The position numbers and the translations under genes were made by a program. This document shows, in pieces, positions 18,317-59,390 of a stretch of DNA of 64,000 bases. The stretch is from the NCBI RefSeq assembly GCF_006345805.1, contig NC_043025.1, forward strand, positions 186,001 to 250,000. Reading direction: 5' to 3'. This DNA comes from Octopus sinensis (Eukaryota). The notes under the pieces are model-generated. The model saw only the letters and a list, made by a program, of their open reading frames with translations. It was not told the DNA's origin and ran no database searches. Within the stretch, counting starts at the first letter, position 1. Each line of letters begins with the position of its first letter.

Positions 18317-18712
18317 GGCGCAGGAGTGGCTGTGTGGTAGGTAGCTTGTTTACCAACCACATGGTTCCGGGTTCAGTCCCACTGCGTGGCACCTTGGGAA
18401 AGTGTCTTCTACTATAGCCTCGGGCCGACCAAAGCCTTGTGAGTGGATTTGGTAGACGGAAACTGAAAGAAGCCCGTCGTATATATGTATATATATATAT
18501 GCGTGTGTGTGTTTGTGTCTGTGCTTGTCCCCCTAGCATTGCTTGACAACCGATGCTGGTGTGTTTATGTCCCCGTTACTTAGCGGTTCGGCAAAAGAGA
18601 CCGATAAAATAAGTACTGGGCTTACAAAAGAATAAGTCCCGGTGTCGAGTTGCTCGATTAAAGGCGGTGCTCCAGCATGGCCGCAGTCAAATGACTGAAA
18701 CAAGTAAAAGAA
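18317..18712 (+). mobile_element. SINE family B, full length (reference copy)
   Basis: Head ggcgcaggagtggctgtgtgg (A-box-like), ggttcagtccc (B-box-like), internal TA/GT tract, tail ...gtcaaatgactgaaacaagtaaaag; more than 10 copies in the window. Confidence 0.9.
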
Positions 18713-18844
18713 ACGAATAAAAGAAAAGAAACGAATATATAGATATATGTGTGTGCGTGTACATATATACTACTATGGCACTCCGTCGGTTGAGACGAAG
18801 AGGTTTCCAGTTGATCCAGTCAACAAGACTACTCATGAAATTCT

Positions 18845-27771: not shown

Positions 27772-27802
<31 letters not shown>

Positions 27803-28019
27803 TTGTGTGTCTGTGTTTGTCCCCCTAGCATTGCTTGACAACCGATGCTGGTGTGTTTACGTCCCCGTCACTTAGCGGTTCGGCAAAAGAGACTGATAGA
27901 ATAAGTACTGGGCTTACAAAGAATAAGTCCCGGGGTCGATTTGCTCGACTAAAGGCGGTGCTCCAGCATGGCCGCAGTCAAATGACTGAAACAAGTAAAA
28001 GAGTAAAAGAGTAAAGAGT
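27609..28019 (+). mobile_element. SINE family B, full length
   Basis: ggcgcaggagaggctgtgtgg...caagtaaaagagtaaaagagtaaagag. Confidence 0.9.
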
Positions 28020-28055
28020 ATGTATTTATATATATATATATATACATATATATAT

Positions 28056-28089
<34 letters not shown>

Positions 28090-28398: not shown

Positions 28399-28459
28399 AT
28401 TATATATATATATATAAATACACATTTATATATACATATATATGTATATATATGTACTA

Positions 28460-28772
28460 AAGAATCATCTTCGTAGTCATAAAGCGAGTCAGATGAGTGA
28501 CAACCAGGCCACTGGTGGTGGTGTAACACACCATACTAATCATATCTGTCGGGCATGGGGAAGAGAGTGTAATTCGGCAGGAGGACTTAAACGATATGCA
28601 AAGGTACATGAAGCCCAGTTACAACTACACCTGGCTATTACCAGTAAAGGTTTTAGTTGCCAATTCTGTACAAGACAGGCTAAAAAGTCACATTCGATCA
28701 CAGCACCAGTAAGAGTTAAGCTTCGTGCAATGGGTATACTCGATAACGAGGAGGCAGCCATAATATATATGT
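28460..28772 (+). mobile_element. 3' end of the RTE family (third copy), complete terminus
   Basis: Matches the reverse complement of 7145-7400 and extends to ...gataacgaggaggcagccataatatatat. Confidence 0.9.
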
Positions 28773-29195
28773 ATATATATATATATACATATTCATATAT
28801 ATATAGTGTAGTGTAGTGTATATATTCATATATATATATAGTATAGTGTAGTGTATATATTCATATATATATAGTATAGTGTAGTGCCTCTGTTGAACTG
28901 GACGGACGTCTATTTGTTTCTCTCCCAAGTCAGTAGCAAGCTACACAGCTTCAAAACTTTTCTGACCTTAAATATATATATATTTGTAACCACGTGTTTG
29001 CCTACAAACCCGTAAGTACGTTTTTATTTAACTACAAATTGTTATATACACTTGTTTTTCTTTTAATATCCTCAAACAACCAAATAATCAAAAACTCACA
29101 CCCTTAAGAGAGACCATTTATATATAGATACACTTCTTTAACTCCCAAGAAAGAATATATATATATATATATCAAAAATCAAAAGAAAAACAAAC

Positions 29196-30401
29196 ATGAC
29201 TAACTTGCAGGCCTGCAACAGACGAAATTGGTCTGATAATGAAATTGATGTTTTAATAAACACTTGGTTCTCTCTTTCCCAAACAGAAAATTTAAATGTT
29301 TTGTGTTTGAATGAGATTGCCGAAAAACATCACAAGTGATCAACACACGATACGTCAAACAGATTCGTAGCAAACTGAAACATATCGAAGTATCTTTCAA
29401 ACTGACAAAAGGCCATTTTGAAAAGCTTCTTTATATTTTCACTGTTCAAGAACAGCAACAGCTAGAAAATCAGCAGCCACAGCAACAACAACTACAGAAT
29501 GAACCACTCCTGGTTCCCAGCACAATGGCTGACCCTAACATCGGTCAAGCACAACAACAACAACAACAGCCACTCCTCAACTCTAGCATACTAGATGATT
29601 CACTAAATGCCAGTATCTTTTCACCGCTCTCACGGCAACCACCACAATTATCATCATCATCATCACCACCGCTGCCACCATCGTCTTCTATCACCAAAAA
29701 TACCAACAAAAAACCAAATAAGAAACCACTGCTCTCTTCCCCCACATCACCATCTCAATACTACTGCAGTAACAAAAACTTAAAGAAACATAGGAAGCAG
29801 AATGCGCCCCCCCACGGCACAAACAAGAAACCCCAAAATATGCCGCTATTCACTGCGCCAGAGACTCTGCACAAATAGTGACTGCATCTTCACGCATCTA
29901 CCCGGCACTAGACGCACTACCGGCCAAGGCCAAAGCATGCATCCCACAATAACATCAACACCACCAAATAGTAAATCGAAATTCAAAACACACACAACTC
30001 GGATTCCCAAAATCTGCCGGTATTCCCAACGTGAGACAACATGTCTGCTGAGTGACTGTCCCTTCACTCATCTTCCAGGGACCCGACGCACAAACAGAAA
30101 CGGGGCTTCAAGCCAACACACAAACCTGAATAAAGATAAAGATAGAAACACACCATGCTGCAGTAATGCTGGTCCAGTCTTTTCAGGAAGACACAAAAAC
30201 AACAACAACAAAAGTGGAAACTACAACCCCATCCAACAGTGCAACCACACCTCCAGCCAAAAACAGCTCCCTAAGCAGGAAAATTCTTTTTTAGCCATGT
30301 TGAACATGGCAAAAGAGATACACAAAAATATTCTAGCCATCACTCAACACCATCCTATGCTATTACCCCAGTGCACCAATTTCCCACATTGCTGCCACTA
30401 A
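29196..30401 (+). pseudogene. LINE ORF1 with two frameshifts: Myb/SANT-like N-terminus, Q/S/P-rich linker, two CCCH fingers
   Basis: ATG 29196: MTNLQACNRRNWSDNEIDVLINTW...EIA; shift near 29320 into INTRYVKQIRSKLKH; shift at the C-run near 29810; C-x8-C-x4-C-x3-H at 29841-29897 and 30015-30071. Confidence 0.7.
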
Positions 30402-33400
30402 CACACACAAAAAATCCAAACCCCCTGCAACAGTCAAAACCAGCCACTACACTAACCTCCACATTTCTACTCAATGCACAAGGTGTCAGCCCTTCCATCA
30501 ATGCACAAAAATGGAAGGTCCAATTCATTGAAGACTGGGTTGGTAACCATTCACACCACATCCCTTTCTTCATTCTCACTGAGACCCACCTTGACAACTC
30601 CCACTTGGAAGCCGAAGTGAGAGTGAAGAATTTCACAACCATCCGCGCGGATCGTATCGGCAGGAGGAAGGGTGGAACTGCCATTTTCCCGCATGATTCA
30701 TTTACGGCAGATGGAAATAGTATATTCTCCAACGGCTACCGTGAATCAGTCACCGTGCACAACAAAGCCAATGACCTGACAGTAGCTGGGCTCTATAGGC
30801 CGCCCCAAACACTCATACTGTGCTTTAAAGAATGCATCAACAGCATTAAGTGCTTTATTCAACAGTGCCATTCTAGCAACCTACTCATGATGGGAGACTT
30901 CAATCTACCCTGTGTTGACTGGACTACAAACTGTTTGAAACCAAGCACTCCCGCCTCAACCGCTGACAAAGAAGCAGCAGAGTCACTTTTCGACTTTACG
31001 AATGAGTTTTTCTTGTCCCAACTTGTCCTTGCACCAACAAGACATCAGAACATTTTGGACCTAGTGTTTAGTAAGCACACTAACACCATACATAATGTTA
31101 CAGTGGAAAAAACCCTTCTTTCAGACCATGACATGGTTCTCTGTAACATGAAATTCCACCAGCCGAAAGCTAATCCTAGTGACCTCCCTCCAGCCCACCC
31201 ATTTGACAACATGGATCTCCATAATGCCAACTGGGATGCAATCAGGAACGAGCTATCACATGTTGACTGGTCCGTTACACATACACACATCTCCACCAAC
31301 CATAAAACATCTTGGCAGATCTTTGTAGACACTGTCACAGACATATGTGCAAAACACTCCCCATCAAGACCTGTGAACAAAAAGTGCAGAATCCCCCAAA
31401 ACAGAAAAACCATTATGAGAAAAATAAAAAGAACAAACAAAAAAATTAACAAACTAAAGTACTGCCAACAGCAACACACACATTCGCCTGCTATCGCACT
31501 GCTTGAATCCAAAAAATATAACCTCCAACAATGCATGAAGACCCTCATCAATAACCAAAGATCAGCTGAGGAGAAGTGGGCCATTGAAAAAATCAAACTC
31601 AACCCCAAAGTGTTCTTTTCATTTGCGAGGAAACGCAGGGTCACTGTCTCCATTGTTGGACCTCTAATTGATGAAACTGGCACTCTCCAAGATAATGCCA
31701 AATCCATGGCCGAGATACTGCAGAAACAATACTGCTCTGTTTTCAGCAATCCTGATATGGCCGATCTGGGCTGTATCAGTGATGTCAACCCCCAACACAC
31801 TATATCGGACATAACGTTTAGTGCCCCTGATGTCTTAGCGGCGATAAACGAAATAAAACACAATTCAGAAGTAGGCCCCGATAGGTTCCCGGCTTGTGTC
31901 CTGAAGGTGTGTCGACACCAACTTGCATCTCCCCTTGCTAATCTGTGGAGAAACTCACTGGATGCTGGCTATATTCCAAAAAACCTTCTGTCCCAGTCTG
32001 TTGTCCCAGTTTTCAAAAAGGGAAACAAGTCCCTTGCTGTGAACTACCGTCCGATCTCACTCACCTCTCATATCATCAAGGTATTTGAGAGGGTGGTGAG
32101 ATCTCGAATAACCCAATTTCTGGAAAGCAACAGACGGCTGATCTCCAACCAACATGGGTTCCGTAATGGAAGGGACTGCCTAACGCAGCTCCTGCATCAC
32201 TTTGATGACATTTTGAGAGCTTTGGGAGAGGGCTCCAACACCGATGTCATCTACCTTGATTTCAGTAAGGCCTTCGACAGGGTCGATCACAAGATCCTAT
32301 TGAAAAAACTATCCAACATTGGTGTCTCTGGAAAGTTACTGAAATGGATCAAGTGTTTCCTGACAGACAGATCTCAACATGTTGTAGTTGAAGGGGTAAA
32401 ATCAAGCCCAGCCAAAGTCAGTAGTGGCGTTCCGCAAGGTACTGTGCTGGGCCCACTTCTTTTCATCATCTACATTAATGACATTAATGACATCATCAAG
32501 CACAGCAACATAAAAATCTTTGCAGATGATTCCAAGCTACAGAAGGTCATAAATGAGGCGAGTGACCGGACATGCCTTCAGTCAGATCTACTGGTTGTTA
32601 TCCAATGGGCAGAAAAAAAACAATATGCTGCTGAACGAGGATAAATTTGAGTTAATCCACTTTGGAAAAGAGGATGCCCTGAAACTCCCATACTCCCTTC
32701 CTTCAGGTGAAACTCTCGCGGCGTCCAACAACATCAGAGACTTGGGAGTAATTGTGGACAACAACATAAGCTGGGCCACTCATATAAACACCAAAGTTGA
32801 CATGGCCCGCAGAATGTGTTCCTGGATTCTCAGAACTTTCCAGTCGGGAGATATCCACACCATTATCCTTCTCTTCTCCACTTTTGCCCGACCCCACCTT
32901 GAATACTGTTGTCCACTGTGGTCTCCCCACACAATACAAGGTATCATAAAAGTTGAAGCACCTCAAAGGGCAATCACAAAAAAGATAGATGGCATGACAG
33001 GCCTCGACTATTGGGTCGACTAGAAAAGCTGAAACTTTATTCTCTCCAACGTCGTCGTGAGCGCTACATCATCTGCATGATGTGGAAAATATTCCATCAG
33101 CATTGCCCAAATGATGTTGGCATCACCTTTAAGGTACATCCAAGGCTTGGGCCCCGTGCCATCCGCCCAAAACAAAAATTGCACTCTCATCTCATAACAA
33201 CAATACGGCACAATTATTTCACCTCAATTGGCCCCGCTCTCTTTAACATTACACCAAAACACATTAAAACAGAAACTGACCCTATAAGGTTCAAGAAGTC
33301 TTTGGACAGATTCCTTCAAGAAATCCCGGATAAACCCCCTACACCCGGATATGTCTCTGTAAACAATAACTCTCTACTTGAGTGGGCCATAGTGCCCAAA

Positions 33401-33406
33401 TTTTGA
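30371..33406 (+). pseudogene. LINE ORF2 (APE + RT) with two single-base frameshifts (A-run near 32615, G-run near 33015)
   Basis: 757-aa uninterrupted ORF 30371-32644, continued by ORFs 32553-33023 and 33011-33406. Confidence 0.92.
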
Positions 33407-33495
33407 CTTGAAAGACTTCACCAGATGGTGCTATTAAGTTAGACATGGCCTGGGCCAATAATGGCCGAAACCTATCAAAGTATCAAAGTATCAAA

Positions 33496-33555
<60 letters not shown>

Positions 33556-33640
33556 ATTCATATATATACATATATATATATACATATATATATACATATA
33601 TATATATAAACATATGTATATATATATGTATATATATATA

Positions 33641-35900: not shown

Positions 35901-35938
35901 GGGGGGCGTTTTATTCGTACATATATATAAACATATAC

Positions 35939-35982
<44 letters not shown>

Positions 35983-35984
<2 letters not shown>

Positions 35985-36398
35985 TCTTTTACTCTTTTAC
36001 TCTTTTACTTGTTTCAGTCATTTGACTGCGGCCATGCTGGAGCACCACCTTTAGTCGAGCAACTCGACCCCGGCACTTATTCTTTGGAAGCCCAGTACTT
36101 ATTCTATCGGTCTCTTTTGCCGAACCGTTAAGTAACGGGGACGTAAACACACCAGCATCGGTTGTCAAGCAATGCTAGGGGGACAAACACAGACACACAA
36201 ACACACACACACACACATATATATATACATATATACGACAGGCTTCTTTCAGTTTCCGCCTACCAAATCCACTCACAAGGCATTGGTCGGCCCGGGGCTA
36301 TAGCAGAAGACACTTGTCCAAGATGCCACGCAGTGGGACTGAACCCAGAACCATGTGGTTGGTTAGCAAGCTACTTCCCACACAGCCACTCCTGCGCC
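35983..36398 (-). mobile_element. SINE family B, full length
   Basis: Reverse complement of the 18317-18712 type; (CTCTTTTA)n tail. Confidence 0.9.
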
Positions 36399-44845: not shown

Positions 44846-45332
44846 GATGACATGAAAAGCCTTGACTATTGGCATCGACTCAAAAAGCTCAGGCTTTGCT
44901 CCCTCCACGGCCGCTGTAAGCTCTATATCATCTGTATGATGTGGAAAATATTTCATCAACATTGCCCATCTTTAAAATTCGTCCGAGGCTTGGCCCTCGT
45001 GCCATCCGTCCACTACAGAAATGTTCGTGTCGTATCACAACACTATGACAGAACTATTTCACCTCAATTGACCCTGCTCTCTTCAACATCGTGTCAAATA
45101 CACACAAAGGAGGAAAGTGACTTCGCGGTATTCAAACTATCCCCAGATGATTACCCCAACAAATACCAGATAAACCACCCACACCCAGTTATGCCTCTGT
45201 AAACAATAACCCTCTGCTTGAATGGGCTACGGTTCCCCAGAGCTGACTGTGTATCTTTTCCAGGTGGTGCTATTAAATTAGACATGGCCTGAGTCAACTT
45301 CGGCCGAAACTTATCTAAGTAATCTAATCTAG
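44846..45332 (+). mobile_element. 5'-truncated CR1-group LINE, sister subfamily
   Basis: LDYWHRLKKLRLCSL...YIICMMWKIFHQHCP; 3' UTR aligns with 33330-33496. Confidence 0.88.
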
Positions 45333-55387: not shown

Positions 55388-55650
55388 TGTGTGTGTGTGT
55401 GTGTGTGCGCGTGTGTGTGCGCGTGTGTGTGTGTGTATGTTTGTGTGTCTGTGTTTGTCTCCCCAACATCGCTTGACAACCAATGCTGGTGTGTTTATGT
55501 CTCCGTAACTTAGCGGTTAGGAAATAGATACTCATAGAATAAGTACTAGGCTTACAAAGAATAACTCCCGGGGTCGATTTGCTCTAGTGAAGGCGGTGCT
55601 TCAGCATGGCCACAGTCAAATGACTGAAACAAGTAAAAGAGTAAAAGAGC
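55350..55650 (+). mobile_element. (GT)n plus SINE family B 3' half
   Basis: gtgtttgtctccccaacatcgcttgacaacc...caagtaaaagagtaaaagag. Confidence 0.85.
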
Positions 55651-56886: not shown

Positions 56887-58982
56887 CTAGCAGCATAGCC
56901 CGGCGTTTCCCGGGTATGTAAGAGCCCCTAGTAGGCAACGACTAATCCCAATCTAGTCCTTTCCCTCTAGGGAACGAAGGTGCGTGTGTAGGTTGCAATG
57001 TCTTCTCTTCACTCCCAAATAACTATCAAACAGCTATCGATAATTCAACCCAACCAATTCCTACTAGGAAGAAATTACGTTCGAGACTTTAACCCCAACA
57101 CCGCCACTTCTGCTGCAGCCGCAAGTTATTCGAATACTTTTTTTGTTTAAACTTTCTTTATAACTACCACCCCAAACGTTTTACCTTAAATTTTTGATGT
57201 ACCCTAAGGGTCCTCGGACGCTACTTGCAAACTCTTGGTTTATTATAAACCGCTTTTGTCGTGTGCACCAAAAACCTTTTCCATTTGTTTGTTCAGTTTG
57301 GTCACTTTTGACTTTTTCGTTGTTGTCACTCACATTGCTGCCCGCTTTTTTGCCATTTTTGTACATTTTTATACATTTTGGGATACTTACCCCACATGTT
57401 CCGAGAGTTAAAAAGGTCGAGTTGCGTCCCCTAGACAGTCTGTAGAAAATGTGTTGCATATAAAAAGCTTAGATTCTCGACCCCATGTCGAATTTATCGA
57501 TTTTTTTTCAGAACTGGGGGAACTTTTTAAAATTTTCACTGCGTTAGTTTTGAATTATGACATTGGGCTATGTGCGTGTCAAGTTTCATCAGAATCGGTT
57601 GAAAGCCGTGGTCAGGGTGAGGGTACAACCTGACAGACACACACTTGCAAGTCGGGTAGAACGGTCGCTAGTAGTTTCAGATGCCTGAGCAGCGGCATAA
57701 CGGGAAGCTGTTTGCGAGAGGCGCAAGGCGGTTTCCTCGTGGGTCTCGCGTGCCCTTCTAGCCCTAGCAGCCGATGCCTTGGCCGTCCGAGGGCTGAGGA
57801 GGGTCCTTCTCTTCTTGGGTGGCATTTTGGTGGATAGCAATGTGTTTGGCAAAGGTGTAATAAAAAGGAACACGTGGGGTAAGTATTTTGGTGGATAGCA
57901 ATGTGTTTGGTAAAGGTGTAATAAAAAGGAGCTCGTGGGGTAAGTATCCGAAAATGTATAAAAATGTACAAAAACGGCCAAAAAGCTGGCAGCAATGTGA
58001 GTGACAACAACGAAAAAGTCAAAAGTGACCAAACTGAACAAACGAAAGGAAAAGTTTTTTTGGTGCACACGACAAAAGTGTTTTATAATAAACCAAGAGT
58101 TTGCAAGTAGCGTCCGAGGACCGTTAGGGTACGTCAAAAATTGAAGGTAAAACGTTTGGGGTGGTAGTTATAAAGAAAGTTTAAACCCAAAAAGTATTCG
58201 AATAACTTGCGGCTGCAGCAGCTATTAGCAGAAGTGGCGGTGTTGGGGGTAAAGTCTCGAATGTAATTTCTTCCTGGTAGGAATTGGTTGGATCGAATTA
58301 TCGATAGCTAAAAAGGTCAAGTTGCGTCCCCTAGACAGTCTGGTTTGTGTTTAATACACAAATTTGTTTGCTATGTGTGCCACATATGATTAAATTAACC
58401 GATTTTTTCCAATAATGTATCCTATTGGAATAAAAAGGGCTATATAGCTCCTTGGAGCAGACATGATGCTCGTTGTGAAAAAAAAAAAGATTCCTGCCAA
58501 TTTGTGAAAGATATTGTCGAAAATATGTCATCTTGAATTTGAACGCGATTTCCCAAAATGGCATGATTTTATCGATTGTTTCTGATGGTAAGGTATTGCA
58601 TGGAAAACTAACGTCAGAATTGAGTTTCTTAGGGTAACATTAAGCTTCACCATGAGTTTGGTGAAAATCGATTGCAAGTTGTGAAAACTACCATTGCATA
58701 AACTACCGTTGCATAAAAAAAGCTTAGATTCTCGAGTTGCGTCCCCTAGACAGTCTGTGGTTCATGTTTATGATTCTCGACCCCATGTCGAATTTATCAA
58801 TTTTTTTCAGAACTGGGGGAACTTTTCAAAATTTTCGCTTCGTTAGTTTTGAATTATGACATTGGGCTATGTGTGTGTCAAGTTTCATCAGAATCGGTTG
58901 AAAGCCGTGGTCAGGGTGAGGGTACGAGAAAACAGACACACAGAAGCACGCACAGACAAACTGCCGTTTATATATAGAGAGA
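56887..58982 (-). mobile_element. Composite non-autonomous Helitron, 2.1 kb, with a duplicated head, an internal inverted repeat and a RepHel N-terminal relic
   Basis: Minus strand A|TC start (58982); cccgggaaacgccggg hairpin and CTAG|T end (56887); 57446-57645 repeats 58720-58940; 57031-57395 is inverted vs 57936-58310; MPPKKRR...ETHEETALRL...ETTSDRSTRL at 57825-57643. Confidence 0.82.
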
Positions 58983-58987
58983 TATAT

Positions 58988-59390
58988 ACTCTTTTACTCT
59001 TTTACTTGTTTCAGTCATTTGACTGCGGCCATACTGCAGCACCGCCTTTAATCGAGCAACTCGACCCCGGGACTTTTTCTTTTGTAAGCCCAGTACTTAT
59101 TCAATCGGTCTGTTTTGCCGAACCGCTAGTTGACGTGTACATAAACTCACCAGCATCGGTTGTCAAGCAATGCTAGGGGGACAAACACAGATACACAAAC
59201 ACACACACGCATATATATACATATATACGACGGGCTTCTTTCAGTTTCCGTCTACCAAATCCACTCACAAGGCTTTGGTTGGCCCGAGGCTATAGTAGAA
59301 GACACTTGCCCAAGGTGCCATGCAGTGGGACTGAACCCGGAACCATGTGGTTGGTAAACAAGTTACTTACCACACAGCCACTCCTGCGCC
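58988..59390 (-). mobile_element. SINE family B, full length
   Basis: actcttttactcttttacttg...cagccactcctgcgcc. Confidence 0.9.

What the first reader, a model, noticed from the sequence alone, without database searches (positions are those of the whole stretch)
29196..30401. CR1-group LINE ORF1 with a Myb/SANT-like domain plus tandem CCCH zinc fingers
Seen: a 47-codon frame too short for the ORF track (ATG 29196: MTNLQACNRRNWSDNEIDVLINTWFSLSQTENLNVLCLNEIA) joins by a 1-nt shift to (RKTSQV)INTRYVKQIRSKLKHIEVSFK. A Q/S/P-rich linker and two C-x8-C-x4-C-x3-H fingers (29841-29897, 30015-30071) follow, each with a shared LPGTRR tail. Inference: W-x3-E-x3-LI-x2-W...IA...R-x3-QIR-x-KL fits Myb/SANT-like (trihelix/MADF-type) DNA-binding domains. 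Knowledge: described CR1-group ORF1 modules are mainly PHD, esterase, RRM and CCHC, while Myb/SANT-like proteins are typical of PIF/Harbinger. A DNA-binding fold joined to RNA-binding CCCH fingers could be an undescribed ORF1 architecture, possibly for target selection or autoregulation.
Basis: partly seen in the sequence, partly recalled or inferred. Interest (0 to 1): 0.82.

Follow-up and report, generated by a model that had tools for sequence, protein, structure and literature searches.

The report
LINE ORF1 with Myb-like and CCCH domains
A decayed jumping gene (a CR1-like LINE, probably in an octopod genome) encodes a first protein that joins a Myb/SANT-like DNA-binding-type domain to two CCCH zinc fingers, a real, repeated domain combination that the surveys of LINE proteins I could search do not list.

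Summary
Window 29196-33496 (+) is one CR1-like LINE: ORF1 (29196-30401, two frameshifts), APE+RT ORF2 (to 33406, two frameshifts) and a (TATCAAAG)3 tail.

- **N-terminal domain.** The ORF1 N-terminus is Myb/SANT-like by sequence profiles. The window copy scores 20.4 bits against Pfam Myb_DNA-bind_4, below the cut-off of 27. A sister copy scores 31.7 bits. hhalign against bona fide repeats gives 93.8% probability.
- **Fold.** A fold search gave nothing, so the fold is not confirmed structurally.
- **Not flank.** Two independent contigs (L008, L010) carry the same colinear Myb-like / linker / CCCH / C-terminal helix ORF1. Window versus L008 gives E 6e-42, end to end.
- **CCCH module.** C-x8-C-x4-C-x3-H followed by LPGTRR is a conserved ORF1 module. 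Sister LINE families (gadid fish, marine plankton) combine it with a PHD finger. The octopod lineage replaced the PHD half with the Myb-like domain.
- **Exchange.** L008 carries this ORF1 on a distant ORF2 (25% identity), which suggests ORF1 exchange.
- **Novelty.** I found no paper describing CCCH or Myb/SANT in a LINE ORF1. Repbase and Dfam could not be checked.

Verdict: a new variant of a known kind. Function (RNA binding plus DNA or chromatin tethering) is inferred only.

The parts
28890..29195 (+). Possible 5' UTR; the 5' boundary is not determined. It contains a (TA)n tract at about 29155-29173.
   Evidence: There is no other copy of this stretch in the window. The upstream repeat ends at 28723. 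C>G and A>T strand skew typical of the element begins at about 29000-29075.
29196..29321 (+). ORF1, first half of the Myb/SANT-like domain (MTNLQACNRRNWSDNEIDVLINTWFSLSQTENLNVLCLNEIA).
   Evidence: Pfam Myb_DNA-bind_4 profile positions 1-22. The WSDxExxxLIxxW motif is shared with P0126, P0127 and P0128.
29323..29327 (+). Frameshift site 1, an A5 run; one base is missing relative to the reading frame.
29324..29440 (+). ORF1, second half of the Myb/SANT-like domain (KTSQVINTRYVKQIRSKLKHIEVSFKLTKGHFEKLLYIF).
   Evidence: The Pfam hit spans the join (residues 9-75 match profile positions 1-72 of 89). hhalign. AF2 helices 14-28, 35-48, 51-67 and 72-87.
29441..29806 (+). Q/S/P-rich linker, low complexity.
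   Evidence: A Q-rich linker also follows the domain in P0126 and P0127. The TSPxxY motif is shared with the Argonauta copy.
29807..29813 (+). Frameshift site 2, a C7 run.
29841..29915 (+). CCCH finger 1 (C-x8-C-x4-C-x3-H) plus its LPGTRR tail.
30015..30089 (+). CCCH finger 2 plus its LPGTRR tail; an old tandem duplicate of finger 1.
   Evidence: The two finger units are about 63% identical in DNA over 152 columns. L008 has a single finger that matches both.
30282..30341 (+). Conserved C-terminal helix of ORF1 (NSFLAMLNMAKEIHKNILAI); a candidate oligomerisation segment.
   Evidence: F and L are invariant in all ORF1s aligned. It is conserved in L008 and present in L004, L006, L007 and P0125.
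30399..30401 (+). ORF1 stop codon, after ...PHCCH.
   Evidence: L008 has the same ...PQCCH* end.
30470..33406 (+). ORF2: APE endonuclease (about 30524-31129), reverse transcriptase (about 32021-32800) and a C-terminal HLEYC-type domain. Frameshifts lie at the A8 run 32613-32620 and at 33013-33015.
   Evidence: Pfam Exo_endo_phos_2 at 1.4e-14 and RVT_1 at 1.2e-26. Frames.
33407..33472 (+). Short 3' UTR.
   Evidence: About 71% identical to the 3' fragment at 44846-45321.
33473..33496 (+). 3' tail of three TATCAAAG octamers, with no poly(A).
   Evidence: Relatives have analogous 8-10-nt tandem tails.

Best explanation
Window 29196-33496 is one copy of a CR1-like non-LTR retrotransposon. It is either dead or mis-assembled at homopolymer runs.

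Its ORF1 is a single modular protein of about 400 aa with four parts:
- an N-terminal Myb/SANT-like (Pfam Myb_DNA-bind_4, trihelix-type) helical domain;
- a Q/S/P-rich disordered linker;
- two tandem CCCH fingers, a duplication of the last finger of an ancestral three-finger array;
- a conserved C-terminal helix.

Shown here: the architecture is real, repeated and colinear in independent copies. The CCCH plus C-terminal-helix half is inherited from a broad LINE clade whose other members carry a helical domain plus a PHD finger in front of it. The Myb-like domain is unrelated to that N-terminal half and replaced it in the octopod lineage.

Inferred: ORF1p works as the element's RNA-packaging protein. 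The CCCH fingers bind single-stranded LINE RNA and the C-terminal helix drives multimerisation. The Myb/SANT-like domain takes the role that the PHD finger (a chromatin reader) plays in sister families, holding the RNP on DNA or chromatin at or near the integration site. Sequence-specific target choice is possible but not indicated by the few insertion sites seen.
For: **Anatomy.**

**Myb/SANT-like assignment.**
- Pfam PF13837 gives E 6.9e-4 (20.4 bits) across the repaired join.
- An exhaustive HMMER search of 1.84 billion proteins returned only four hits. Three are LINE ORF1 N-termini (P0126, P0127, P0129). The fourth is a 6x Myb_DNA-bind_4 protein (P0128, E 6.4e-5).
- P0126 passes Pfam's cut-off (31.7 bits against 27, E 2e-7).
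- The profile-profile comparison with the six P0128 repeats gives 93.8% probability, E 1.7e-7, over 63 columns. The control against the N-terminal domain of sister ORF1s gives 0.08%.
- AF2 with a 4-sequence alignment gives an all-helical domain, pLDDT 75.6.

**Part of the element, not flank.**
- In L008 the Myb-like ORF lies 5' of a CCCH finger, the same C-terminal helix, the ...CCH stop and then an APE+RT ORF.
- Window ORF1 versus L008 ORF1 is colinear over residues 9-402 and 12-368, E 6e-42.
- L010 has the Myb-like domain, an S/P linker and two decayed fingers.

**The CCCH module is ancestral.**
- Fingers with the same spacing and a basic H-L/I-x-G-x-K/R tail close the ORF1 of L001, L003, L004, L006, L007, P0122 and P0125.
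- The ligands are invariant in 11 of 11 fingers.
- The only PDB sequence matches are the CCCH RNA-binding fingers of MBNL1/2 and Nab2, and they are weak (E about 1).
- In the ORF2 tree, the window and Argonauta copies nest among these PHD-CCCH families.

**Background.** Myb domains bind target DNA in R2 elements (PMC12503042). ORF1p is regarded as an RNA chaperone (same source).
Against: - The window copy's own Pfam score is below the gathering cut-off.
- Foldseek of the AF2 model against the PDB found no Myb/SANT/trihelix structure (best E 1.7). The single-sequence model also gave nothing. A phmmer search of the N-terminal sequence against PDB chains also found no Myb protein.
- The Pfam CCCH families are only sub-threshold (E 0.012).
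- No copy seen has the Myb-like domain and the fingers in one uninterrupted frame. The window has a frameshift in the linker, L008 has a frameshift plus a stop, and L010 has several. The Argonauta copy is 5'-truncated before the domain.
- GC content drops from 0.44-0.49 to 0.27-0.34 across the Myb-like segment. This fits a foreign origin for the module.
- No biochemical function was tested.
- (TA)n flanks the window copy on both sides, but the Argonauta copy and the fragment at 45321 are not followed by (TA)n. Such tracts occur about every 735 bp in the window. There is therefore no evidence for target specificity.
Confidence: 0.7

Rival explanations
1. There are two genes rather than one. A short upstream ORF0 encodes a free-standing Myb/SANT-like protein with a Q-rich tail. 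A separate ORF1 starting at ATG 29802 encodes the CCCH protein (199 aa, intact). The apparent second frameshift would then be the natural arrangement.
For: - The 199-aa finger ORF 29802-30401 is intact and starts with an ATG.
- In the window, L008 and L010 the Myb+linker part and the finger part are never in one open frame.
- The Myb+linker frame ends at 29878, overlapping the finger ORF.
Against: - The frame offset differs between the window (+1) and L008 (-1).
- L008 has no ATG and has an in-frame stop five codons before its finger.
- In the Argonauta copy the linker and both fingers are in one intact 267-aa ORF. It shares the linker motif TSPxxY, which in the window lies upstream of the C7 frameshift.
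- The window's shift sits in a C7 homopolymer, a typical lesion or assembly-error site.
Confidence: 0.12
2. The N-terminal domain descends from a Myb/SANT-like fold but does not bind DNA here. It would serve as a protein-protein, histone-tail (SANT-type) or RNA-binding or oligomerisation module of ORF1p.
For: - The fold search found no DNA-binding Myb structure.
- The domain is highly diverged (30-41% identity among copies). It lacks the Gly and Cys that are invariant in the P0128 repeats.
- From general knowledge, SANT domains bind histone tails rather than DNA.
- Other ORF1 N-termini, such as the P0125 coiled coil, are oligomerisation modules.
Against: - The positions that define the family are kept: W-S-D-x-E-x3-L-I-x2-W, and Q-I-x2-K-L-K in helix 3.
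- Helix 3 is basic.
- In sister families the equivalent position holds a PHD finger, another chromatin-directed module.
Confidence: 0.25
3. The Myb-like segment is unrelated flanking sequence (a host exon or a fragment of a Harbinger-type Myb gene) that lies by chance in front of a 5'-truncated LINE.
For: - There is a GC-content step at about 29450.
- The Argonauta relative shows no such domain.
- No second copy exists in the window.
Against: - L008 and L010 carry the same domain in the same position before the same fingers, in different contigs and sequencing runs.
- The end-to-end colinear alignment has E 6e-42.
- P0127 (L009) has the same domain and Q-rich linker.
Confidence: 0.02

Closest known systems
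CR1/L2-lineage LINE ORF1 with a PHD finger (type III of Khazina & Weichenrieder; Metcalfe & Casane 2014, PMC4120745)
   Same: The ORF2 clade and overall layout are the same: ORF1, then APE-RT ORF2, then a short tandem-repeat tail. The nearest ORF2 relatives (42-46% identity) have an ORF1 with a PHD-like finger followed by the same CCCH fingers and C-terminal helix.
   Different: The window's ORF1 has no PHD, RRM, CCHC, esterase or transposase-22 match. The PHD-bearing half is replaced by a Myb/SANT-like domain and a low-complexity linker. The two N-terminal domains are unrelated (hhalign 0.08%). The survey's text mentions neither CCCH nor Myb/SANT.
Pfam PF13837 Myb_DNA-bind_4 (Myb/SANT-like, trihelix/GT-1 type) proteins, such as the 6-repeat protein P0128
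   Same: The sequence signature is shared: W-S-D-x-E-x3-L-[IL]-x2-W, an I-[AS] helix 2, and Q-[CI]-x2-[RK]-[IL]-K-x-L-x3-[FY] in helix 3. A helix pattern of three plus one is predicted.
   Different: Here the domain sits at the N-terminus of a retrotransposon ORF1 and is fused to CCCH fingers. It lacks the conserved Gly before helix 3 and the Cys in helix 3. The window copy scores below Pfam's cut-off. No structural match was obtained.
N-terminal zinc-finger plus Myb DNA-binding module of R2 elements (PMC12503042)
   Same: It is a non-LTR retrotransposon protein carrying a Myb-type domain next to zinc fingers. In R2 the module recognises the target DNA.
   Different: R2 has a single ORF with a restriction-like endonuclease. 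Its Myb is a canonical Myb and its fingers are of a different type that binds DNA. Here the domain is in ORF1 of an APE-type element, the fingers are CCCH (RNA-binding type), and no target specificity is evident.
Tandem CCCH RNA-binding fingers (Nab2/ZC3H14, MBNL)
   Same: The ligand spacing C-x8-C-x4-C-x3-H falls in the CCCH range. Sister ORF1s have closely abutting tandem fingers (H-P-x-[LI]-C). The only PDB sequence hits of the finger profile are Nab2 and MBNL1/2, and Pfam's best hit is the Nab2-type zf-CCCH_2.
   Different: All matches are sub-threshold (E 0.006-1). The family-specific basic tail H-L-P-G-T-R-R is not a feature I know from those families.

Membership tests
CR1-group LINE (CR1/L2 lineages of the Jockey superfamily) | ORF2 with an N-terminal APE-type endonuclease and a reverse transcriptase | tested here: met
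   Exo_endo_phos_2 at 1.4e-14, Exo_endo_phos at 7.9e-6 and RVT_1 at 1.2e-26.
CR1-group LINE (CR1/L2 lineages of the Jockey superfamily) | 3' end formed by a few copies of a short (about 8-nt) repeat, with no poly(A) tail | tested here: met
   (TATCAAAG)3 at 33473-33496. Relatives have (TATCTAAGTG)2, (ATCAAAGTGT)2, (TCAATAGGT)2 and (ACCCTAGGT)2. The octamer tail of CR1 is described in PMC2612034.
CR1-group LINE (CR1/L2 lineages of the Jockey superfamily) | RT domain groups with reference CR1-clade sequences in a phylogeny | not tested
   No named reference RTs (Repbase/RTclass1) were available. The tree of unnamed relatives shows only that the window groups with PHD-type-ORF1 families. The HLEYC...W.P motif after the RT resembles CR1/L2 from memory only.
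Myb/SANT-like DNA-binding domain (Pfam PF13837 Myb_DNA-bind_4) | Score at or above the Pfam gathering cut-off (27 bits) | tested here: inconclusive
   The window copy scores 20.4 bits (E 6.9e-4), below the cut-off. Homologous copy P0126 scores 31.7 bits (E 2e-7), above it. P0127 scores 15.5 bits and P0129 gives no hit.
Myb/SANT-like DNA-binding domain (Pfam PF13837 Myb_DNA-bind_4) | Profile-level homology to bona fide family members | tested here: met
   hhalign of A2 against six repeats of P0128 gives 93.8% probability, E 1.7e-7. phmmer hits P0128 at E 6.4e-5 in 1.84 billion proteins. The negative control gives 0.08%.
Myb/SANT-like DNA-binding domain (Pfam PF13837 Myb_DNA-bind_4) | Three-helix Myb/SANT/trihelix fold | tested here: inconclusive
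   AF2 (4 sequences) predicts helices 14-28, 35-48, 51-67 and 72-87 at pLDDT 75.6. Foldseek against the PDB gives no match with E below 1.
Myb/SANT-like DNA-binding domain (Pfam PF13837 Myb_DNA-bind_4) | Binds double-stranded DNA | not testable with these tools
   This needs EMSA, SELEX or a complex structure.
CCCH (C3H1) zinc finger | Ligand pattern C-x7-8-C-x4-5-C-x3-H, with the ligands conserved among homologues | tested here: met
   Both fingers are C-x8-C-x4-C-x3-H. C, C, C and H are invariant in 11 of 11 homologous fingers.
CCCH (C3H1) zinc finger | Significant match to a curated CCCH profile | tested here: inconclusive
   zf-CCCH_2 gives E 0.012 and 16.5 bits against a cut-off of 25.8. 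Relatives give E 0.006-0.036. PDB hits to Nab2 and MBNL have E about 1.
CCCH (C3H1) zinc finger | Zinc coordination and single-stranded RNA binding | not testable with these tools
   This needs metal analysis and RNA-binding assays.
Described LINE ORF1 types I-IV (RRM+CCHC; coiled coil+RRM+CTD; PHD; esterase) | Presence of RRM, CCHC knuckle, transposase-22, PHD or esterase domains | tested here: not met
   None of these was reported by Pfam for the three ORF1 pieces at E up to 10. By that scheme the ORF1 would fall in 'type V, unclassified' (PMC4120745).

The most novel reading that the evidence does not exclude
The Myb/SANT-like domain makes this ORF1p a sequence- or structure-specific DNA binder that steers the LINE RNP to preferred sites, for example AT-rich or microsatellite DNA. 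That would be the first case of target selection delegated to ORF1 in an APE-type LINE. The whole Myb-CCCH ORF1 would also be a portable cassette that has moved between distant ORF2 lineages (window-type versus L008-type).
Probability: 0.12. Interest if true: 0.8.

Novelty: new variant of a known kind. Interest (0 to 1): 0.55.

Why it matters
ORF1 is the least understood LINE protein. The published catalogues I could search list RRM, CCHC, coiled coil/CTD, PHD and esterase modules only.

This locus adds two points.

- **A CCCH-finger ORF1 class.** It seems widespread (cephalopods, gadid fish, marine plankton contigs) but goes unmentioned in those catalogues.
- **A lineage-specific swap.** A PHD half was replaced by a Myb/SANT-like domain. 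The RNA-packaging protein therefore carries a domain of a DNA-binding family.

If the domain binds DNA or chromatin, the system becomes tractable for asking how ORF1 proteins contribute to nuclear or target engagement. It is also a further example of module shuffling between LINE lineages. The value is to transposon biology. The copy itself is a dead or nearly dead insertion with no evident effect on the host.

Tried and rejected
- The word-indexed protein search with the joined ORF1 found nothing at E up to 1. The exhaustive HMMER search was needed.
- A single-sequence AF2 model had pLDDT 56 and its Foldseek search gave only generic helical repeats. It was discarded.
- The AF2 model built from four sequences had pLDDT 75.6, but Foldseek still gave no significant hit. 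The structural test is therefore inconclusive, not supportive.
- phmmer of the N-terminus against PDB sequences gave one spurious hit at E 0.35.
- I considered that the N-terminal helical domain of sister ORF1s ('FSKDELLIGKLK...KHMKAAFKLL') might be a diverged homologue of the Myb-like domain. hhalign rejected this at 0.08%.
- I considered (TA)n microsatellite targeting, because the window copy is flanked by (TA)n on both sides. I rejected it as unsupported. The Argonauta copy and the 45321 fragment are not followed by (TA)n, and the window has 87 perfect (TA) tracts of 6 or more units.
- The Argonauta copy could not test the N-terminus, because it is 5'-truncated or interrupted at about L002:4935.
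- An exact look-up of the window's 199-aa ORF found no record, so the source species was not identified.
- The run accessions of L008, L009 and L010 appear in no searchable paper.
- L011, a relative of L008's ORF2, has only 500 bp upstream and a PHD at the start of ORF2. It was uninformative about ORF1.
Full report
**1. What is in the window.**

Reading 28600-31200 and all three forward frames of 29100-33500 shows one non-LTR retrotransposon on the + strand.

ORF1 runs from the ATG at 29196 to the stop at 30399-30401 and is broken twice:
- at the A5 run 29323-29327;
- at the C7 run 29807-29813.

ORF2 follows from about 30470 to 33406. It matches APE (Pfam Exo_endo_phos_2, 1.4e-14) and RT (RVT_1, 1.2e-26). 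It is also broken twice, at the A8 run 32613-32620 and at 33013-33015. No in-frame stop codon is present.

The element ends in three TATCAAAG octamers (33473-33496), followed by a (TA)n microsatellite.

Every coordinate and peptide in the finding is exact. Three of the four frameshifts lie in homopolymers of 5 or more bases. They may be slippage mutations or assembly errors, and I cannot tell which.

**2. The fingers are real and ancestral.**

CRYSLRQRLCTNSDCIFTH and CRYSQRETTCLLSDCPFTH are the only non-microsatellite C-x7-8-C-x4-5-C-x3-H matches in the six-frame translation of the 64-kb window. The two finger units are an old tandem duplication, about 63% identical in DNA over 152 columns.

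ORF2 relatives were found at 40-51% identity, and I read their contigs:

- **Argonauta hians copy (L002).** ORF2 is 51% identical. It has two fingers, CRESIAKRLCMDPACRYTHLKGTRR and CTNSANKRICTNPHCTYAHLPS, and the same C-terminal helix.
- **L001, L003, L004, L006 and L007.** Related ORF1 proteins (P0123, P0124) come from gadid fish, and L006 is a Tara-type marine metagenome contig. Their ORF1s are built as a helical domain, a PHD-like finger, three CCCH fingers and a C-terminal helix. The last finger has the same C-x8-C-x4-C-x3-H spacing and a basic H-[LI]-x-G-x-[KR]-[KR] tail.
- **P0125.** It has a coiled coil, several CCCH fingers and an exact THLPGTRR.

The four ligands are invariant in 11 of 11 aligned fingers.

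Curated profiles match only weakly. Nab2-type zf-CCCH_2 gives E 0.006-0.036. A profile of the fingers finds only MBNL1/2 and Nab2 in the PDB, at E about 1. The CCCH class is therefore supported by pattern and conservation, not by a significant profile hit.

**3. The N-terminal domain.**

Joined across the A5 run, residues 9-75 match positions 1-72 of 89 of Pfam Myb_DNA-bind_4. The match has E 6.9e-4 and 20.4 bits, below the 27-bit cut-off.

An exhaustive HMMER search of 1.84 billion representative proteins with the 95-residue N-terminus returned exactly four hits:
- P0126 (E 7.6e-7, 40% identity), P0127 and P0129. These are short ORFs with the same NWS[DE]xE[IV]DxLIxxW...RxxxQIxNKLKxI...KHxxKL...EQQQ layout.
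- P0128, a protein with a TINF2_N domain and six bona fide Myb_DNA-bind_4 repeats (E 6.4e-5; Pfam 1.4e-93).

P0126 itself passes Pfam's cut-off (31.7 bits, E 2e-7).

A profile of the four LINE N-termini against a profile of the six P0128 repeats gives 93.8% probability, E 1.7e-7, over 63 columns. The same profile against the N-terminal domain of the PHD-type sister ORF1s gives 0.08%. That result serves as a control. It also shows that the Myb-like domain replaced the ancestral N-terminus rather than diverging from it.

The structural test did not help. AF2 on four sequences predicts four helices at pLDDT 75.6, but Foldseek against the PDB has no hit below E 1.7.

I therefore call the domain Myb/SANT-like on sequence-profile evidence only.

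**4. It belongs to the element.**

They do not.

- **L008.** P0126 lies at the 5' end of Logan contig L008. Downstream, in another frame, come NPIICRYSLRERICLQQDCTFTHLPGTRR, TPCCGDAGQ, NSFLDMLNLVKEIQRSILSI and ...PQCCH*, then an APE+RT ORF.
- **Window versus L008.** The window's ORF1 and L008's ORF1 align colinearly from residue 9 to the last residue, at 32% identity and E 6e-42. DNA identity is 69-77% in the finger and C-terminal parts.
- **L010 (P0129).** It shows the same domain, an S/P-rich linker and two decayed fingers.
- **L009 (P0127).** It has the domain and Q linker, followed by a piggyBac-like fragment.

No second copy of ORF1 exists in the window.

One weakness remains. No copy seen has the domain and the fingers in a single open frame. 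The intact 267-aa Argonauta ORF joins linker and fingers in one frame and shares the TSPxxY linker motif, which in the window lies upstream of the C7 shift. I therefore favour one fusion protein. I keep a two-ORF reading at about 0.12.

**5. What kind of LINE.**

- The octamer tail without poly(A) is the CR1 hallmark (PMC2612034).
- Relatives share analogous 8-10-nt tandem tails.
- In a neighbour-joining tree of ORF2s, the window and Argonauta copies nest among the PHD-CCCH-ORF1 families.
- PHD-type ORF1s are described for the CR1 and L2 lineages (PMC4120745).

I had no named reference RTs, so 'CR1 group' is supported but the clade is not formally placed.

**6. A side result.**

L008's ORF2 is only 25% identical to the window's. 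Its best relatives are the most distant hits of the window's ORF2, at about 30%. One of them, L011, has a PHD at the start of ORF2 and a (TTAC)n tail. In the tree L008 sits in that remote clade.

The same ORF1 type is thus attached to two distant ORF2 lineages, with homology ending at the ORF1 stop. This fits the ORF1 exchange between CR1 and L2 lineages proposed by Metcalfe & Casane. A chimeric short-read contig cannot be excluded.

**7. Mechanism (inferred).**

By analogy with ORF1 proteins in general, regarded as RNA chaperones (PMC12503042), and with CCCH fingers as single-stranded-RNA binders (general knowledge), I propose three roles:
- the finger pair binds the element's RNA;
- the conserved C-terminal helix mediates multimerisation;
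- the Myb/SANT-like domain engages DNA or chromatin.

The last role rests on two arguments. The domain occupies the place of a PHD finger, a chromatin reader, in sister families. In R2 elements a Myb domain next to zinc fingers recognises target DNA.

Nothing indicates site specificity. (TA)n flanks the window copy on both sides. The Argonauta copy and the 3' fragment at 44846-45321 are not followed by (TA)n, and such tracts occur about every 735 bp here.

The GC content of the Myb-like segment (0.27-0.34) is well below that of the rest of the element (0.44-0.49). This is compatible with capture of a host or transposon Myb-like exon.

**8. Novelty.**

Full-text searches for CCCH/C3H or Myb/SANT together with ORF1 and non-LTR elements returned only host restriction factors (ZAP, ZCCHC3) and unrelated papers. 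The dedicated survey of Jockey-superfamily ORF1s contains neither 'CCCH' nor 'Myb' nor 'SANT'.

Repbase and Dfam could not be queried, so prior deposition of such consensus sequences cannot be excluded.

I rate this a new variant of a known kind. It is a modular LINE ORF1 with a previously unlisted domain pair. It is of solid interest to transposon specialists but not a new category.

Noticed in passing
L008:354-4563 (Logan SRR29346471) versus window 29196-33406: The same Myb-CCCH ORF1 (E 6e-42, colinear) is joined to an ORF2 only 25% identical to the window's, placed in a remote clade of the ORF2 tree. Homology stops at the ORF1 stop codon. This suggests ORF1 exchange between LINE lineages, or a chimeric contig.
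   Followed up: partly
window 29323-29327, 29807-29813, 32613-32620, 33013-33015: All four reading-frame breaks of the element are single-site frameshifts with no nonsense codon, and three sit in A5, C7 and A8 homopolymers. The copy may be intact in reality if these are assembly errors, or it may be very young.
   Followed up: partly
L001:333-1484, L003:385-1818, L004:460-1845, L006:175-1803, L007:2622-4037; P0122-P0124: Sister LINE families have an ORF1 built as a helical domain, a PHD-like finger, three CCCH fingers and a C-terminal helix. Related ORF1 proteins P0123 and P0124 are from gadid fish, and L006 is a marine metagenome contig. The three CCCH fingers are not mentioned in the ORF1 surveys I could search.
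   Followed up: partly
window 44846-45321 (+): A 3'-terminal fragment of a related LINE family, 71% identical to 32988-33482. It ends in two degenerate octamers (TATCTAAG TAATCTAA) and is not followed by (TA)n.
   Followed up: partly
window 29150-29450 versus 29450-33400: GC content steps from 0.27-0.34 over the Myb-like segment to 0.44-0.49 over the rest of the element. This is compatible with a separate origin for the N-terminal module.
   Followed up: no
window 29155-29173 and 33497-33640: (TA)n tracts flank the element on both sides. The window holds 87 perfect (TA) tracts of 6 or more units (3% of bases), so this may be chance.
   Followed up: partly
window 28453-28723 (+) and 7145-7417 (-): A 270-bp repeat, 90.8% identical between its two copies. 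Its translation contains a C2H2-like motif (CRAWGRECNSAGGLKRYAKVH). It is probably the tail of another transposable element, lying just upstream of the LINE.
   Followed up: no
window 27800-28084 and at least 12 other places (e.g. 35918-36203, 18508-18767, 58969-59201, 55438-55649): A short interspersed repeat of about 200-290 bp at 71-94% identity, on both strands. It is SINE-like and very abundant in the window.
   Followed up: no
window 299-835 (+), 8379-9269 (-), 13767-14006 (+): Further reverse-transcriptase fragments of other LINE families, detected by tblastn with L008's ORF2.
   Followed up: no
L009:400-1273 (Logan SRR11869391): A copy of the Myb-like ORF1 5' part and Q linker is followed by a piggyBac-transposase-like reading frame. 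This looks like a nested insertion or a rearrangement.
   Followed up: no
L002:4500-4568 and 4873-4935 (Argonauta hians BAAFZT010000203.1): An inverted duplication (peptide KHVYRIRASFLRTNIRQY on both strands) lies directly upstream of the 5'-truncated LINE copy. It may be a foldback or MITE-like element at the truncation point.
   Followed up: no
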